From Octopus sinensis (Eukaryota), in NCBI RefSeq assembly GCF_006345805.1, contig NW_021831733.1, positions 1 through 34,038 on the forward strand: a stretch of DNA of 34,038 nucleotides. The letters are read 5' to 3'. The notes under the pieces were generated by a model. The model was not told the origin of the DNA. It saw only the letters and a program-made list of their open reading frames with translations, and ran no database searches. A program made the position numbers and the translations under genes. Within the stretch, counting starts at the first letter, position 1; each line of letters opens with the position of its first letter. Shown here in pieces: positions 9,250 to 29,820 of this stretch.

Positions 9250-9470
9250 TTTACTCTTTTGCTTGTTTCAGTCATTTGACTGCGGCCATGCTGGAGCACC
9301 GCCTGTAGTCGAGCAAATCGACCCCAGGACTTATTCTTAATAAGCCTAGTACTTATTCTATCAGTCTATTTTGCCGAACCGTTAAGTTACGGGGAAGTAA
9401 ACACACTAGCATCGTTTGTCAAGTGATGTTGGAGGGACAAGCACAAACACACAAACATACACACACACAC
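9250..9470 (-). mobile_element. SINE family C, 3' half (split from 11201-11355 by the hammerhead concatemer)
   Basis: TTTCAGTCATTTGACTGCGGCCATGCTGGAGCACCGCC...GGGACAAGCACAAACACAC leads into the internal CA/TA microsatellite. Same tail at 32228-32370. Pairing with 11201-11355 relies on the recalled family structure. Confidence 0.75.
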
Positions 9471-9491
9471 ATATATATGTATATATATATA

Positions 9492-9545
<54 letters not shown>

Positions 9546-9843
9546 AAAAATGGTAAATAATTTTCCTGTGGTTTTTCATGTAACCAACAATTATTTACCG
9601 GTAAATTTCGGTATGTAAATACGACAAAATAATTGTCAAGACCTTTGTAAGGTTCAGTATATAGTAAAGAAAAATAAGTTGGCTAGCAGCAAGCTGTTTC
9701 GCCTCATACCGAAGGAATTAGAAATGGCAGTCAAAGACCGTTTTTTCCATTTCTATAAGTGGAGATTCCAAAAACGAAGGCCCTTGCGGCTCACATACAC
9801 AAAACCGGAGTGGCAAATATACGAATTCAGTCACTTACCGTTA

Positions 9844-9915
9844 ATAGCGAACACGGTGTTTCTGGATCACAAACATATAAAAAAAGGGGAGTTTAAATTC
9901 CGTCATCAGAGCTAT
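9844..9915 (-). ncRNA. Type I hammerhead ribozyme, unit 1 (stem I closing pair mutated)
   Basis: Minus strand: ATAGCT-CTGATGA-CGGAATTTAAAC...GTTTGTGATCCA-GAAA-CACCGTG-TT^CGCTAT. Stem I strand is ATAGCT instead of ATAGCG, which breaks the pair next to the core. Confidence 0.7.
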
Positions 9916-10370
9916 ATTCGGTAGCTTTATCAAATGCCACCAGCCCTCACTTCTGACCCAGCGACATCAGATAGTGGGGGGAAGTGCGCAGATGTTAAAA
10001 CCAAGTAACGACTGGGAACGTAAATTTTCCCTCCAAAATTCTGCCATGCGCGCCTTCTGGGTAATCGTAATGGAATGAGGAACCCACATGGTAATACAAT
10101 TATTTTGTCGTATTTACATACCGAAATTTACCGGTAAATAATTGTTGGTTACATGAAAAACCACAGAAAATTATTTACCATTTTTATTGTATTACCATGT
10201 GGATTCCTCATTCCATTACGATTACCCAGAAGGCGCGCATGGCAGAATTTTGGAGGGAAAATTTACGTTCCCAGTCGTTACTTGGTTTTAACATCTGCGC
10301 ACTTCCCCCCACTATCTGATGTCGCTGGGTCAGAAGTGAGGGCTGGTGGCATTTGATAAAGCTACCGAAT

Positions 10371-10442
10371 ATAGCGCTGATGACGGAATTCAAACTCCCC
10401 TTTTTTTATATGTTTGTGATCCAGAAACACCGTGTTCGCTAT
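10371..10442 (+). ncRNA. Type I hammerhead ribozyme, unit 2
   Basis: Stem I ATAGCG(10371-76)/CGCTAT(10437-42), 6 bp perfect. Core CTGATGA(10377-83). Stem II GGA..CAAAC/GTTTG..TCC with a C-A opposition at its base. GAAA(10424-27). Stem III ACA/TGT around a CCG loop. Cleavage triplet GTT(10434-36). Confidence 0.85.
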
Positions 10443-10924
10443 TAACGGTAAGTGACTGAATTCGTATATTTGCCACTCCGGTTTTGTGTATGTGAGCCGC
10501 AAGGGCCTTCGTTTTTGGAATCTCCACTTATAGAAATGGAAAAAACGGTCTTTGACTGCCATTTCTAATTCCTTCGGTAGAGGCGAAACAGCTTGCTGCT
10601 AGCCAACTTATTTTTCTTTACTATATACTGAACCTTAGAAAGGTCTTGACAATTATTTTGTCGTATTTACATACCGAAATTTACCGGTAAATAATTGTTG
10701 GTTACATGAAAAACCACAGGAAAATTATTTACCATTTTTATTGTATTACCATGTGGATTCCTCATTCCATTACGATTACCCAGAAGGCGCGCATGGCAGA
10801 ATTTTGGAGGGAAAATTTACGTTCCCAGTCGTTACTTGGTTTTAACATCTGCGCACTTCCCCCCACTATCTGATGTCGCTGGGTCAGAAGTGAGGGCTGG
10901 TGGCATTTGATAAAGCTACCGAAT

Positions 10925-10996
10925 ATAGCGCTGATGACGGAATTCAAACTCCCATTTTTTTATATGTTTGTGATCCAGAAACACCGTGTTCGCTAT
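10925..10996 (+). ncRNA. Type I hammerhead ribozyme, unit 3
   Basis: Same architecture as unit 2. Predicted cleavage after 10990, exactly 554 nt downstream of the unit 2 site (10436). Confidence 0.85.
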
Positions 10997-11200
10997 TAAC
11001 AGTAAGTGACTGAATTCGTATATTTGCCACTCCGGTTTTGTGTATGTGAGCCGCAAGGGCCTTCGTTTTTGGAATCTCCACTTATAGAAATGGAAAAAAC
11101 GGTCTTTGACTGCCATTTCTAATTCCTTCGGTATGAGGCGAAACAGCTTGCTGCTAGCCAACTTATTTTTCTTATATATATATATATATATATATACATA

Positions 11201-11355
11201 TATGCGACAGGCTTCTTTCAGTTTCCGTCTACCAAATCCACTCACAAGGCTTTGGTCGGCCCGAGGCTATAGTAGAAGATACTTGCCCAAGGAGCCACGC
11301 AGTGGGACTGAACCCAGAACCATGTGGTTGGTAAGCAAACTACTTAGCACACAGC
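11201..11355 (-). mobile_element. SINE family C, 5' half
   Basis: CGACAGGCTTCTTTCAGTTTCCGTCTACC...CTTGCCCAAGG...GGGACTGAACCC...CACACAGC, matching 1646-1805. Confidence 0.8.
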
Positions 11356-13638: not shown

Positions 13639-14089
13639 TTAACGCATTAGAATTTAAACCGGCCATATTTTGCCTAGATACCTTACAGGTTTTTGTCTTT
13701 AAACCAGCCATATCCAGCCTCTCCCACTTAACCTACAATGTCATTCTAAAGATAAACAATCACATCATAGAAGGCATTTAAACCGGTCATATTTTGCCAA
13801 GAGACCCTACTGGTTTTATCCAGCCTCTCCCACTTAACCTGTAATGTCATTCTAAAGATAAACAATCACATCATAGAAAGCATTTAAACCGGTCATATTT
13901 TGCCAAGATACTCAACAGGTTTTATCCAGCCATATCCAACCTCTCCTACTTAACCTGTAATATCATTCTAAAAATAAACAACCACATCATAGAAACCTCA
14001 AAGCTACCAGATAATGTATAATTCATTCAATTCAATGTACATAAATAAGCTTTATATTCTATAAAGTAATCTGAATGCTAAAGGTCTAA
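13639..14089. mobile_element. Degenerate piggyBac-like MITE with three internal ~106-124-bp tandem units
   Basis: Left end TTAA-CGCATTAGAATT and right end AATGCTAAAGGTC-TAA are degenerate versions of TTAA-CCCTTTAGCATT/AATGCTAAAGGG-TTAA. Internal units start TTTAAACCGG at 13653, 13777 and 13883. Confidence 0.55.
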
Positions 14090-16328: not shown

Positions 16329-16917
16329 GGCGGCGAGCTGGCAGAAATGTCAGCACGCTGGACGAAATGCTTAGCGGTATTTCGTCTGCTGTTACGTTCA
16401 GAGTTCAAATTCCGTCGAGGTCGACTTTGCCTTTCGTCTTTTCGGGGTCGATTAAATAAGTACCAGTTACACACTGGGGTCAATATACTCGACTTAATCC
16501 GTCTGTCTGTCCTTGTTTGTCTCCTCTGTGTTTAGCACCTTGTGGGTAGTAAAGAAATGGGTATTTCGTCTGCCATTACGTTCTGAGTTCAAATTCCGCC
16601 GAGGTCGACTTTGCCTTTCATCCTTTCGGGGTCGATTAAATAAGTCCCAGTTATTCACTGGGGTCGATGTAATCGATTTAATCCATTTGTCTATTCTTGT
16701 TTGTCCTCTCTGTGTTTAGCCCCTTGTGGGTAGTAAAGGAATATGTATTTCGTCTGCCACTACGTTCTGAGTTCAAATTCCGCCGAGGTCGACTTTGCCT
16801 TTCATCTTTTCGGGGTCGATAAATTAAATACCAGTCGATTATATCGACAACTGTGGTCGATATAATCGACTCATCCCCACCTCCGCCAAGTTACACTTCT
16901 GGCAAAACTTTGAAATA
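16329..16917 (+). mobile_element. SINE family A head-to-tail trimer (full unit plus two headless units)
   Basis: Unit 1 at 16329-16560. Units 2 and 3 restart at GTATTTCGTCTG (16561, 16745). The last unit has a different tail. The whole array is flanked by ATTATTAGGAAYTGTA (16309-16324, 16918-16933). Confidence 0.9.
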
Positions 16918-17820: not shown

Positions 17821-18640
17821 ATTACTACCACCAACACTACCACCACAACCATCACCATCACCTTCAGTATCAAGATGACGATAAATACCATTATCACCAT
17901 CACAACCATCATCACCACAATCACCTTTATTACCGCCATTGCAACGAAAGCCACCAACACCGCTACCACCACCACTACCACCACCACTACCAATATCAGC
18001 ACCACAACCACCACCACTACCATCACCACCACCACAACCACAACCACCACTATACCACCACCACCACCACCACCACAACCACCACCATACCACCACCACC
18101 ACCTACACCACCACCACCACCACCACAACCACCACCATCACCACCACCACAACCACAACCACCACCATACCACCACCACCACCACCACCACCACCACCAC
18201 CACCATACCACCATCAGAACAACAACAACAACTGCACAATTTCTTAACGACACTCAACCGAACCATCAACACATTATTAGCTGTGGCTCCTTCACAATTT
18301 GCCCCCCCCACTCCGTTTCTCCTCCATTTGCCGTACACTCCCTGACAAACATCCTAACCCCCACCCTTTAACCACGTCGCCGCTTCATTTCTCCATACCT
18401 TGACACACCATCCAGCCACCACCTCTCCCTCCCACCCTCCTTCCACCATTTATATTACGCTAACCGCCAATCATAACTATACAACCACCACAACCACCAC
18501 CACTACCACCGCTGCCGCCGCAAACACATCATCATTATCAGCATCATCATCGCTACCACCACCACCACTACTACTTCTAGAACTACAACTATTACTATCA
18601 CCACTGCTGCTGCTGCGACTGCTGCTGCTTCCTCCATGTA
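17821..18640. repeat. (CCA/ACC)n-rich trinucleotide low-complexity region
   Basis: Degenerate CCA/CAA/CTA runs. They explain the poly-T/P/H/G/V/W ORFs. Confidence 0.9.
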
Positions 18641-19194: not shown

Positions 19195-19370
19195 TGGAAG
19201 AAGAAAAAGATGATGATGATGACGTTGACGTTGATGATGATGATGATGAAGAAGAAGATAATGAAGAAGAGGATTATGATGACGATGATGATGATGATGC
19301 TGACGATGATGATGATGATGATGATGATGATGACGATGATGATGATGATGATAAAGAAGAAGAAGAAGAA

Positions 19371-19401
<31 letters not shown>

Positions 19402-19500
19402 GTGAAGAAGGAGAAGATGATGATAATGATGATGATGATGATGATGACGACGATGATGATGACGATGATGATTATGATGATGATGAAGAAGAAGGAGAAA
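19195..19500. repeat. (GAT)n/(GAA)n compound microsatellite
   Basis: GAT/GAC/GAA triplet runs. Confidence 0.9.
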
Positions 19501-27959: not shown

Positions 27960-28455
27960 ATCTCCTCTCTCTCTCTCTCTGTTTCCTTCTCTCTGACTTT
28001 CATTATCTCTCTCTCTCTGTTTCCCTCTCTCTGACTTTCTCTCTCTCTCTCTCTCTCTGTTTCTTTCTCTCTGACTTTCACTCCCTCTGTTTCCTTCTCT
28101 CTGGCTTTCACTATCTCTCTATTTCTATATTACTCTATATCTGTGTCTGACTGTCTGTCTGTCTGTCTGTCTGTCTGTCTTTCTTTCTATCTCTCTTTCA
28201 CGCTCACTCTCTCTCCAACCCTCACTCTCTCTCCGTCCTTCACTCGCTCTCTCACACACACTTTCTCTTTCTCTGTCACACACACACTTTCTCTCTCTCT
28301 CTCTCTCTCTATCTCTCACACACACACTCTCTCCCACTCTCACTCCCTATTTCTATACTTCTCTGTATCTGTGTCTGTCTATCTTACTGTCTCTTTCTCT
28401 CTCTCTCTCTTACGCTCACTCTCTCCCTCCCTCCCTCTCCCTCCCTCATTCTCCA

Positions 28456-28491
<36 letters not shown>

Positions 28492-28531
28492 TCTCTCTCT
28501 CTCTCTCTCTCTATCTCTCACACACACACAC

Positions 28532-29199: not shown

Positions 29200-29610
<411 letters not shown>

Positions 29611-29684
29611 TAATAATAAAAATAATATAATAATAATAATAATAATAAAAATAAAAATAAAAATAATAATAATAGTAATTAAAA

Positions 29685-29725
<41 letters not shown>

Positions 29726-29786
29726 TAATAATAGTAATAATATTATTATTATTACTATAATCATAATAATAATAATAATAATAATA

Positions 29787-29820
<34 letters not shown>

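What the first reader, a model, noticed from the sequence alone, without database searches (positions are those of the whole stretch)
9539..11173. Retrozyme-like concatemer: a ~554-bp unit with one type I hammerhead ribozyme per monomer
Seen: three near-identical copies of a 553-555-bp non-coding unit. Each holds ATAGCG-CTGATGA-[GGA..CAAAC/GTTTG..TCC]-GAAA-CA-CCG-TG-TT^CGCTAT, a complete type I HHR fold with a 6-bp stem I. The two direct-copy cleavage sites (after 10436 and 10990) are exactly 554 nt apart, so a + strand transcript would self-cleave to a unit-length monomer. Established: tandem type I HHR repeats in animals (non-LTR retrozymes) self-process into monomers that circularise and are thought to be mobilised by Penelope-like elements (PLEs); PLE pseudo-LTRs also carry HHRs. 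Inference: this is an octopus retrozyme or non-autonomous PLE family with a monomer larger than the few hundred nt I recall for animal retrozymes; I cannot check whether it is already catalogued. Caveat: all copies have C opposite A at the base of stem II, which could lower activity.
Basis: partly seen in the sequence, partly recalled or inferred. Interest (0 to 1): 0.92.

Follow-up and report, generated by a model that had tools for sequence, protein, structure and literature searches.

The report
Octopus hammerhead retrozyme, Penelope-type insertion
This is a young, non-coding jumping element in an octopus-like genome whose 554-base units each carry an atypical hammerhead (self-cutting RNA) motif. 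Its insertion pattern matches elements copied by Penelope-like retrotransposon enzymes, so it is a new example of a known class, not a new kind of thing.

Summary
The repeat is real, but it is not three direct copies. Window 9540-11182 holds two arms placed head to head inside a (TA)n microsatellite. One arm is an inverted full unit; the other is a direct arm of about 1.97 units.

Both direct copies carry a complete type I hammerhead core and three helices, with cut sites exactly 554 nt apart. The inverted copy has a broken helix I closing pair. Rfam hammerhead models do not recognise the motif.

At least 152 units are dispersed in the 2.72-Gb genome and differ from their consensus by about 1%. 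In 22 distinct loci the insertions sit in or beside TA-rich repeats in all but one end, have variable 5' ends, and often carry an inverted 5' copy. They end at only two unit positions, ~444 and 554. Head-to-head loci always pair one of each (11 of 11). This is the published Penelope-like-element signature of two internal reverse-transcription start sites and a one-sided "tail".

The odd C-opposite-A at the base of helix II is not a private defect. More than 550 hammerheads in at least seven other families of this genome share the frame CUGAUGA-N-GGA...UCC-N-GAAAC, and their helices I, II and III covary.

Self-cleavage and circular RNA remain untested. This scan has already reported several sister retrozyme families elsewhere in this genome. 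Verdict: new member of a known kind, moderate interest.

The parts
9471..9541 (.). (AT)n microsatellite, left half of the insertion target
   Evidence: TRF. In the 22 distinct loci all element ends but one (the left end of L015) abut TA-rich or related simple repeats.
9540..10094 (-). Inverted arm: one full unit (unit 1-554, sense on the - strand). Its outer end is unit position 554, so this is the arm that carries the tail.
   Evidence: 550 of 555 aligned positions identical to the direct unit
9540..9649 (-). Tail: unit 445-554, the 110 nt between the two recurrent termini. It is present at this end of the insertion only.
   Evidence: termini fall only at ~444 or 554, and 11 of 11 head-to-head loci pair one of each. 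Compare the tail described in PMC8557442 and PMC11167929.
9844..9915 (-). Hammerhead-like motif of the inverted copy, damaged. Helix I 5' strand reads ATAGCT (pair 1.1-2.1 lost), plus one C>T in helix II.
10096..10191 (+). 5'-truncated start of the direct arm (unit 458-554). With 9547-9636 it forms the centre of a long inverted repeat.
10192..10745 (+). Full 554-bp unit (the reference unit used here); 40% G+C
   Evidence: For the whole element 9540-11182, the longest stop-to-stop open frame is 101 codons.
10371..10442 (+). Type I hammerhead motif 1. Helix I is 6 bp, and a 3x3 internal loop plus 3 bp extend it to 10365-10448. Then core CUGAUGA and an unpaired or mismatched C. Helix II is GGA/UCC, an internal loop, then CAAAC/GUUUG with a 16-nt loop. 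Then A, GAAA, and helix III of 3 bp with a CCG loop. The predicted cut lies between 10436 and 10437.
10746..11182 (+). Last, 3'-incomplete unit of the direct arm (unit 1 to ~444). It ends at the second recurrent terminus (..TTTCTT/TATATA), which merges into (TA)n. This arm has no tail.
10925..10996 (+). Type I hammerhead motif 2, differing only by one C>A in loop 2. The predicted cut lies between 10990 and 10991.
11173..11203 (.). (TA)n microsatellite, right half of the insertion target

Best explanation
Window 9540-11182 is one insertion of a young, non-coding, non-autonomous retroelement of the animal retrozyme / Penelope-like-element (PLE) derived class. Its real unit runs from position 445 through 554 and 1 to 444 of my reference unit.

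Proposed mechanism:
- A sense RNA longer than one unit, either a multimeric transcript or a circle, is bound by a PLE reverse transcriptase/GIY-YIG endonuclease supplied in trans.
- The enzyme cuts both strands of a (TA)n microsatellite.
- Each DNA end primes reverse transcription at one of two internal RNA sites, unit ~444 and unit 554.
- Copying runs towards the RNA 5' end for a variable distance.
- The result is two arms facing each other, one with the 110-nt tail and one without.

Each unit carries a sense-strand type I hammerhead of an octopus-specific variant, with one unpaired or mismatched nucleotide on each side of a GGA/UCC helix II base and a short near-palindromic helix III. It most likely cuts weakly on its own. 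It would work better as a double hammerhead between neighbouring units or with protein help, trimming multimeric transcripts to 554-nt monomers that may circularise.

Shown here: repeat anatomy, termini, target, copy number, youth of the family, motif significance, and covariation between families. Inferred: PLE mobilisation, ribozyme activity, and any circular RNA.
For: Family and insertion architecture:
- At least 152 hammerhead-bearing units occur genome-wide, with 139 matches at 86-100% identity on many chromosomes, the full-length ones 94-100%.
- In 22 distinct loci, all element ends but one abut TA-rich or related simple repeats; 3' ends fall only at unit ~444 or 554; 5' ends are scattered; arrays hold 1-5 units; inverted 5' copies are common; and 11 of 11 clean head-to-head loci pair a 554 end with a 444 end. 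If the two ends were chosen independently and equally often, the probability is 0.5^11 = 0.0005.
- These are the published PLE signatures: partial tandems, an inverted 5'-truncated copy, a tail at one end only, and (TA)n targets (PMC8557442); two internal RT start sites whose interval is the tail, cleavage and extension of both strands, and AT-rich targets (PMC11167929).
- PLE-type enzymes are present: at least 147 GIY-YIG matches over the Pfam cut-off, several inside open frames of 760-883 codons.

The hammerhead motif:
- It is significant against chance: 0 descriptor hits in 40 Mb of random sequence.
- Helices I and II are part of the minimum-free-energy fold of the 554-nt monomer, which is unusually self-paired (z = -4.45).
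- Two copies co-fold into the classical double hammerhead, -40.0 against -32.4 kcal/mol for two monomers.
- Subfamily-level changes inside the motif fall only in loop 2 (a 10-nt indel) and the centre of loop 3.
- At least seven other families (more than 550 copies) share the same core and frame. Their helix II distal stems differ but stay paired. Their helix III sequences are palindromic or near-palindromic but different. In the two families checked, helix I is complementary but unrelated in sequence: UUGGG/CUCAA and GUCU/AGAC, against AUAGCG/CGCUAU here.
- A natural, assayed retrozyme hammerhead with a mismatch at the base of helix II exists in axolotl (HHR_Amex2, PMC7229834).
Against: - No Rfam hammerhead model scores the motif even at E<=10.
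- The hallmark G10.1-C11.1 pair next to the core is replaced by C.A.
- On its own the 86-nt motif is not predicted to adopt the hammerhead fold: -12.8 against a minimum free energy of -16.2 kcal/mol, z = -1.15.
- Within the family there is no informative covariation, because the copies are too young.
- Insertion 5' ends show no clear enrichment at the cut site. For an anole PLE the ribozyme was dispensable for insertion in vitro, and no cleaved ends were seen in RNA-seq.
- Expression is not shown. All the public runs holding the unit are contigs, and their RNA status is only a guess.
Confidence: 0.75

Rival explanations
1. It is the same PLE-mobilised non-autonomous element, but the hammerhead-like motif is catalytically dead or irrelevant, an inherited passenger. 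New copies are made from uncut multimeric transcripts and no circular RNA is involved.
For: - Rfam models do not recognise the motif.
- C.A replaces G10.1-C11.1.
- Insertion 5' ends show no clear enrichment at unit 246.
- In vitro, PLE insertion does not need the ribozyme and uses unprocessed RNA (PMC11167929).
- Craig et al. note that hammerheads may simply parasitise PLEs.
Against: - The core is invariant while all three helices are kept paired with different sequences across at least eight families. That argues for long-term selection on the fold.
- Subfamily changes avoid stems and core.
- A double-hammerhead fold is predicted.
Confidence: 0.2
2. It is a SINE-like element copied by a LINE (non-LTR) enzyme, with the inverted arm produced by ordinary twin priming.
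For: The fixed 3' ends, 5' truncation and 5' inversion are also seen with LINE-mediated insertions. Earlier scan notes mention LINEs associated with hammerhead repeats in this genome (I did not check them).
Against: - There is no poly(A) or simple 3' repeat of the element's own.
- Two alternative internal start sites 110 nt apart, used one per arm, and multi-unit tandem arrays are PLE hallmarks rather than LINE hallmarks.
- A sense-strand hammerhead is typical of PLEs and retrozymes.
Confidence: 0.04
3. It is not a mobile element but a local satellite or palindromic duplication, or an assembly artefact.
For: Long inverted repeats (443 nt, 98% complementary) are a classic source of misassembly.
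Against: - 22 distinct loci on many chromosomes show the same termini and targets.
- The tandem junction is seen in contigs of three independent runs, and the unit is found under four organism labels.
Confidence: 0.01

Closest known systems
Animal non-LTR retrozymes (Cervera & de la Pena 2020, PMC7229834; Li, Clavereau & Pollet 2026 preprint, 10.64898/2026.07.22.740005)
   Same: - Short tandem repeats, non-coding, 40% G+C.
- One sense-strand type I hammerhead per unit.
- A strongly self-paired monomer.
- Co-occurrence with PLEs in the same genome.
- Unit length inside the published 51-972 bp range.
   Different: - The hammerhead is not the canonical metazoan type. It lacks a G10.1-C11.1 pair next to the core, has a long interrupted helix II, and gives no Rfam hit.
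- Arrays are short (1-5 units) and copy number is low (~150 units).
- Circular RNA is not shown.
- The host group appears new: in my two searches I found no paper describing cephalopod retrozymes.
Penelope-like elements and their pseudo-LTR hammerheads (Cervera & de la Pena 2014, PMC4209133; Craig et al. 2021, PMC8557442; Frangieh et al. 2024, PMC11167929)
   Same: - Insertion architecture: partial tandem, inverted 5'-truncated copy, one-sided tail, AT-rich or (TA)n target.
- Two internal RT start sites.
- Hammerhead traits: large helix II, an extra nucleotide after A9, and a short near-palindromic helix III suited to dimers.
   Different: - No RT/EN open reading frame, so the element is non-autonomous.
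- The tail is 110 nt, not 30-40 nt.
- There is an additional conserved A between helix II and G12.
- Helix I is a full 6 bp plus an extension.
- Sequence homology to a specific PLE pseudo-LTR was not tested.
Newt satellite 2, Schistosoma and axolotl hammerheads that act as dimers
   Same: - Type I topology and a 2-3-bp helix III.
- A predicted double-hammerhead fold between neighbouring copies.
- Axolotl HHR_Amex2 also has a mismatch at the base of helix II.
   Different: The loop sequences and helix II are unrelated. Activity of the octopus motif is untested.

Membership tests
Hammerhead ribozyme, type I | Conserved core CUGANGA ... GAAA, with a cleavable NUH triplet | tested here: met
   CUGAUGA, GAAA and GUU^C are present in both + copies. 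The core is essentially invariant in 55 units: single-copy changes at only 2 of its 11 positions.
Hammerhead ribozyme, type I | Three helices in type I order, with helix I open-ended | tested here: met
   Helix I is 6 bp plus an extension. Helix II is 3 bp, an internal loop, then 5 bp. Helix III is 3 bp. Helices I and II appear in the monomer minimum-free-energy fold.
Hammerhead ribozyme, type I | G10.1-C11.1 pair closing helix II directly on the core | tested here: not met
   C lies opposite A, and the first G-C pair is one step further out. The same frame is seen in more than 550 other octopus motifs with A.A, C.A, U-A, C-G or G-C at this position.
Hammerhead ribozyme, type I | Score at or above the Rfam model threshold (RF00163 and related models) | tested here: not met
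   No hammerhead hit at gathering threshold or at E<=10. RF00163 does find canonical motifs elsewhere in this genome.
Hammerhead ribozyme, type I | Covariation that maintains the helices | tested here: met
   Between families, all three helices change sequence but stay complementary or palindromic (read by eye from the pattern output). Within the family it is uninformative, because copies differ from the consensus by about 1%.
Hammerhead ribozyme, type I | Mg2+-dependent self-cleavage | not testable with these tools
   Needs in vitro transcription.
Animal non-LTR retrozyme | Dispersed short tandem repeats, non-coding, low G+C, one hammerhead per unit | tested here: met
Animal non-LTR retrozyme | Monomer RNA highly self-paired | tested here: met
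   -156.7 against -130.4 +/- 5.9 kcal/mol for shuffles, z = -4.45
Animal non-LTR retrozyme | Expressed as unit-length linear and circular RNA | tested here: inconclusive
   Only contigs from runs whose RNA status is a guess. A cyclic 585-nt contig (554 + 31) and 'goes back 554' joints fit either a tandem array or a circle.
PLE-type (Penelope-like) insertion, non-autonomous derivative | Partial tandem with an inverted 5'-truncated copy, and a tail at one end only | tested here: met
   11 of 11 head-to-head loci pair a 554 end with a 444 end
PLE-type (Penelope-like) insertion, non-autonomous derivative | AT-rich or (TA)n target | tested here: met
PLE-type (Penelope-like) insertion, non-autonomous derivative | PLE enzymes (RT plus GIY-YIG) available in the genome | tested here: inconclusive
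   At least 147 GIY-YIG matches over the cut-off, some inside open frames of 760-883 codons. I could not check for an RT domain in those frames, because fetching was no longer possible.
PLE-type (Penelope-like) insertion, non-autonomous derivative | Sequence homology of the unit to the pseudo-LTR of a specific autonomous PLE | not tested
The 12 canonical hammerhead loci I had already fetched show no similarity to the unit.

The most novel reading that the evidence does not exclude
The strict pairing of termini, with one arm always starting at unit 554 and the other at unit ~444, may mean something specific. A single, probably dimeric, PLE ribonucleoprotein bound to the 110-nt tail segment of one RNA could hand the two flanking start sites to the two ends of the cut (TA)n target at the same time. 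Head-to-head insertions would then be the product of a concerted two-ended reverse transcription, not of two independent priming events. The octopus hammerhead variant with unpaired nucleotides on both sides of helix II would be a protein-assisted ribozyme class that current models miss.
Probability: 0.25. Interest if true: 0.6.

Novelty: new member of a known kind. Interest (0 to 1): 0.36.

Why it matters
- It adds cephalopods to the animals carrying hammerhead retrozymes. It is also a very young family (about 1% from consensus, found under four organism labels), so it may still be active and could be tested experimentally.
- Its clean insertion junctions give natural, in vivo support for the two-start-site model of Penelope-like reverse transcription, which so far rests on one in vitro study.
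- The shared frame CUGAUGA-N-GGA...UCC-A-GAAA in at least eight octopus families shows that standard covariance models miss a whole lineage of hammerheads. That matters for ribozyme censuses.
- The head-to-head arms would also make long double-stranded RNA, which is relevant in an animal group known for heavy A-to-I editing.

Tried and rejected
- Rfam found nothing as hammerhead on the whole window, the 1.9-kb region, and 121-nt and 101-nt slices. The sub-threshold miRNA hits at 10027-10259 merely reflect the long inverted repeat.
- Single-motif folding does not give the hammerhead fold and is not more stable than shuffles.
- I sought a diverged relative seen as loose ends in run X1 (core reads CCGAUGA ... 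GGAAGC). A pattern search did not find it in the genome. It may be a decayed copy from another individual or an edited transcript, so it was not used as evidence.
- I tried to fetch 20 further loci to look for an autonomous partner.
- The two termini (last 90 nt before 444 and before 554) are not significantly similar in sequence: local score 22 against a shuffle mean of 20. Each does have a hairpin followed by an A/U-rich stretch.
- Conservation within the family: hammerhead stems and core differ from consensus at 0.68% of cells against 1.16% elsewhere. The motif is not the least variable part of the unit, so this is not evidence of constraint.
- ARAGORN found no tRNA in the window.
- The earlier-findings look-up by sequence was blank.
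Full report
**What is in the window**

The element occupies 9540-11182 and lies between two halves of a (TA)n microsatellite, 9471-9541 and 11173-11203. I defined the reference unit as window 10192-10745 (554 bp). On that numbering the layout is as follows:
- 9540-10094: one full unit on the minus strand.
- 10096-10191: unit 458-554 on the plus strand.
- 10192-10745: unit 1-554.
- 10746-11182: unit 1 to about 444.

So the locus is two arms head to head, not three direct copies. The arms form inverted repeats of up to 443 nt at 98-99% complementarity. The copies are 98.6-99.1% identical. The unit is 40% G+C. The longest stop-to-stop open frame in the element is 101 codons.

**The hammerhead motif**

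Both plus-strand copies (10371-10442 and 10925-10996) read as follows:
- Helix I: AUAGCG/CGCUAU, 6 bp, extended by a 3x3 internal loop and 3 more pairs (CCG/CGG).
- Core: CUGAUGA.
- A C, then helix II: GGA/UCC, a 3x3 internal loop with one G.U, then CAAAC/GUUUG and a 16-nt loop.
- An A, then GAAA.
- Helix III: ACA/UGU with a CCG loop.
- Cut site: GUU^C.

The minus-strand copy (9844-9915) has ATAGCT instead of ATAGCG. This breaks the pair next to the cut site, and the copy fails the descriptor.

Evidence on whether the motif is more than chance, and whether it folds:
- My relaxed type I descriptor allows a mismatch at the helix II base, helix II up to 60 nt, helix III of at least 2 bp and helix I of at least 5 bp. 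It finds only the two plus-strand copies in the window and nothing in 40 Mb of first-order Markov sequence.
- Against it, no Rfam hammerhead model matches at any threshold, for either the long-loop or the short-loop subfamily.
- RF00163 does find canonical motifs elsewhere in this genome, 8 of them over the gathering score.
- The isolated motif does not fold into the hammerhead shape by energy minimisation: -12.8 against -16.2 kcal/mol.
- Within the 554-nt monomer delimited by the cut sites, helices I and II are part of the minimum-free-energy structure. The monomer is much more self-paired than shuffles (-156.7 against -130.4 +/- 5.9 kcal/mol, z = -4.45).
- Two copies co-fold into the classical double hammerhead. 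Helix III becomes intermolecular as 5 bp, a C.C mismatch, then 5 bp. The energy is -40.0 against -32.4 kcal/mol for two separate monomers.

**The family**

- The genome has 2.72 Gb in 13,516 contigs.
- The unit gives 139 scored matches at 86-100% identity on many chromosomes, the full-length ones at 94-100%, out of 953 first-look candidates.
- The 27-nt 3' half of the motif occurs 152 times with at most 3 mismatches.
- Fifty-six units from 22 distinct loci differ from their consensus at about 1.2% of positions, so the family is very young.
- Two main subfamilies differ by a 10-nt deletion inside loop 2. A third has C>G at the centre of loop 3. No subfamily-level change touches a stem or the core. 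With so little divergence this is only weakly informative.

**Insertion architecture**

Across the 22 loci:
- All element ends but one (the left end of L015) abut TA-rich or related simple repeats, mostly (TA)n.
- Sense-strand 3' ends occur at only two places: unit ~444 (..TTTCTTTACTATATA) and unit 554 (..CCATTTTTATTGTA).
- 5' ends are scattered (37, 127, 140, 160, 168, 175, 230, 241, 246, 286 and so on), so copies are 5'-truncated.
- Arrays hold 1 to 5 units.
- About two thirds of the loci have an inverted 5' arm.
- In all 11 clean head-to-head loci, one arm ends at 554 and the other at ~444. If the two ends were chosen independently and equally often, the probability is 0.0005. A 110-nt tail (unit 445-554) is therefore present at one end only.
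- Two single-orientation loci (L002 and L020) run from about 434-440 to 554, which is whole units plus the tail.

This is the organisation described for Penelope-like elements:
- Partial tandems forming pseudo-LTRs, an inverted 5'-truncated copy upstream, a tail often present at only one end, and (TA)n targets in the Neptune and Naiad clades (PMC8557442).
- The mechanism proposed from in vitro work on an anole element: cleavage and extension of both DNA strands at AT-rich sites, and reverse transcription starting at two internal RNA sites whose interval corresponds to the tail (PMC11167929).

The genome holds many GIY-YIG domains. At least 147 are over the Pfam cut-off out of 5,029 first-look candidates. 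Several lie in open frames of 760-883 codons, and one recurs at 781 codons in at least 7 of the listed copies. Candidate mobilisers therefore exist.

**Is the C opposite A a defect?**

Pattern searches of the genome for CUGAUGA-N-GGA...UCC-N-GAAAC found 410 matches with N other than C, 3 with C and a 3' N other than A, and 30 and 116 in two narrower searches that also returned helix III. The reversed-pattern controls gave zero.

By eye these fall into at least seven further families.
- The 5' N is A, C, U or G. The 3' N is nearly always A. Together they give A.A (the largest family, spaced ~560 bp), C.A (several families), U-A, C-G, G-C, A.C and C.C.
- C and U alternate within families where the next base is G. 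I infer that CpG decay could account for this.
- The proximal GGA(A)/UCC is constant.
- The distal helix II differs but stays paired: GUGG/CCAC, GUUG/CAAC, GAAUU/AAUUC, an 8-bp and a 10-bp version, and CAAAC/GUUUG here. Compensatory variants occur inside families, for example CCC/GGG against CUC/GAG.
- Helix III is always a short palindrome or a palindrome with one central base: ACAGCUGU, ACGCGU, ACG-G-CGU, ACAG-G-CUGU, and ACAC-C-GUGU here.
- The base before the cut is U, C or A.
- For the two families where I retrieved the 5' strand, helix I is complementary with unrelated sequence: UUGGG/CUCAA and GUCU/AGAC (read with 54, 55).

An invariant core with covarying helices across families is the usual signature of a maintained hammerhead fold. 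The unpaired nucleotide after A9, the large helix II and the palindromic helix III are traits already reported for PLE hammerheads (PMC4209133). The conserved extra A before G12 is not mentioned there. A mismatch at the base of helix II occurs in an assayed axolotl retrozyme ribozyme that cuts slowly alone and better as a dimer (PMC7229834).

I did not build a formal alignment of these families. Their sequences exist only in tool output, and I avoided retyping them.

**Independent data**

Twenty public runs from seven studies and four organism labels hold the unit. I laid contigs from one run per label on the unit.
- They are 95-99% alike in their main pieces.
- They show no difference between 10366 and 10465.
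- Three of them contain the unit-to-unit junction. One 585-nt contig equals 554 + 31, which is a cyclic assembly.
- This rules out an assembly artefact. It cannot separate tandem DNA from circular RNA, and the RNA status of the runs is only a guess. Expression is therefore not shown.

**Comparison with what is known, and novelty**

- The element meets the structural definition of an animal non-LTR retrozyme. It carries the insertion hallmarks of PLE-mobilised sequences, in line with the recent proposal that retrozymes are non-autonomous PLE derivatives (Li et al. 2026 preprint).
- Its 554-bp unit is within the published range of 51-972 bp.
- In my two literature searches I found no paper describing cephalopod retrozymes.
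- Earlier notes of this scan on other parts of the same genome report sister families with units of about 172, 350, 400, 490, 535, 548, 583 and 599 bp. They describe the same (TA)n, head-to-head architecture, and one note describes two conserved termini. Those are unchecked AI notes on different DNA. One of them led me to PMC11167929, which I then read.
- This report adds three things: the terminus census for this family, the 11 of 11 pairing rule, and the superfamily view of the hammerhead variant.

**Verdict**

This is a real, young, non-autonomous Penelope-type retrozyme insertion with an atypical, evolutionarily maintained hammerhead motif. Its catalytic activity and any circular RNA are untested. 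It is a new member of a known kind.

Noticed in passing
window 10340-10440, as read in run X1 (loose ends at 10355, 10396, 10432): Short, low-depth contigs of run X1 carry many clustered transitions (mostly A>G, some T>C and C>T) across the hammerhead region. They turn the core into CCGAUGA ... GGAAGC. The variant is not in the genome within 2 mismatches. It could be RNA from the double-stranded head-to-head arms that has been heavily edited, or a decayed copy from another individual.
   Followed up: partly
genome G000, e.g. C16:25146363-25146408 and C16:25146794-25146839 (loci L036 and L037); C13:29988995-29989039 (L031): Canonical Rfam Hammerhead_1 motifs (GUAC-CUGAAGA-GACCC..GGGUC-GAAAC-AUGU-GUY^GUAC) occur elsewhere, some in tandem 431 bp apart and next to (TA)n runs. 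There is no long open frame within 1.5 kb. They are probably other short hammerhead-bearing elements, and they are unrelated in sequence to the 554-bp unit.
   Followed up: partly
genome G000, e.g. C1:97886944-97888665 and C2:90110554-90114182: The largest family with the same hammerhead frame has A.A at the helix II base and a GUGG/CCAC distal stem. It has several hundred copies spaced about 560 bp apart, including head-to-head arrays of 3-4 units per arm.
   Followed up: partly
genome G000, e.g. C1:207477583, C3:65736423, C6:12733272, C6:12759897, C19:35627265: GIY-YIG domains with identical scores lie inside open frames of 781 codons at several loci. This looks like a young, possibly intact Penelope-like element family and is a candidate mobiliser. 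I did not fetch them.
   Followed up: no
window 10027-10259: Sub-threshold Rfam hits to plant miRNA precursor models (MIR2606 and MIR8007, 60-65 bits against gathering scores of 140-195). They are an effect of the perfect hairpin at the junction of the two arms, not miRNA genes.
   Followed up: yes
window 16376-16835 and 13711-13995: There is a 184-bp tandem repeat (2.5 copies, 89% matches) whose unit contains a tRNA-like B-box-type stretch (GGTTCAAATTCC-like), and a 106-bp tandem repeat (2.6 copies). ARAGORN calls no tRNA in the window. They are probably SINE-derived.
   Followed up: no
window 9300-9420 and 11205-11345: The sequences flanking the microsatellite on both sides look like dispersed short repeats (SINE-like, e.g. 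...GACCCCAGGACTTATTCT... and ...GGGACTGAACCCAGAACC...). So the (TA)n target itself sits in repeat-rich DNA.
   Followed up: no
window 17951-18213, 19209-19486, 27961-28519, 29489-29819: Several unusually long microsatellites lie in one 34-kb window: (CCA)89, (GAT)93, (TC)280 and (TAA)112.
   Followed up: no
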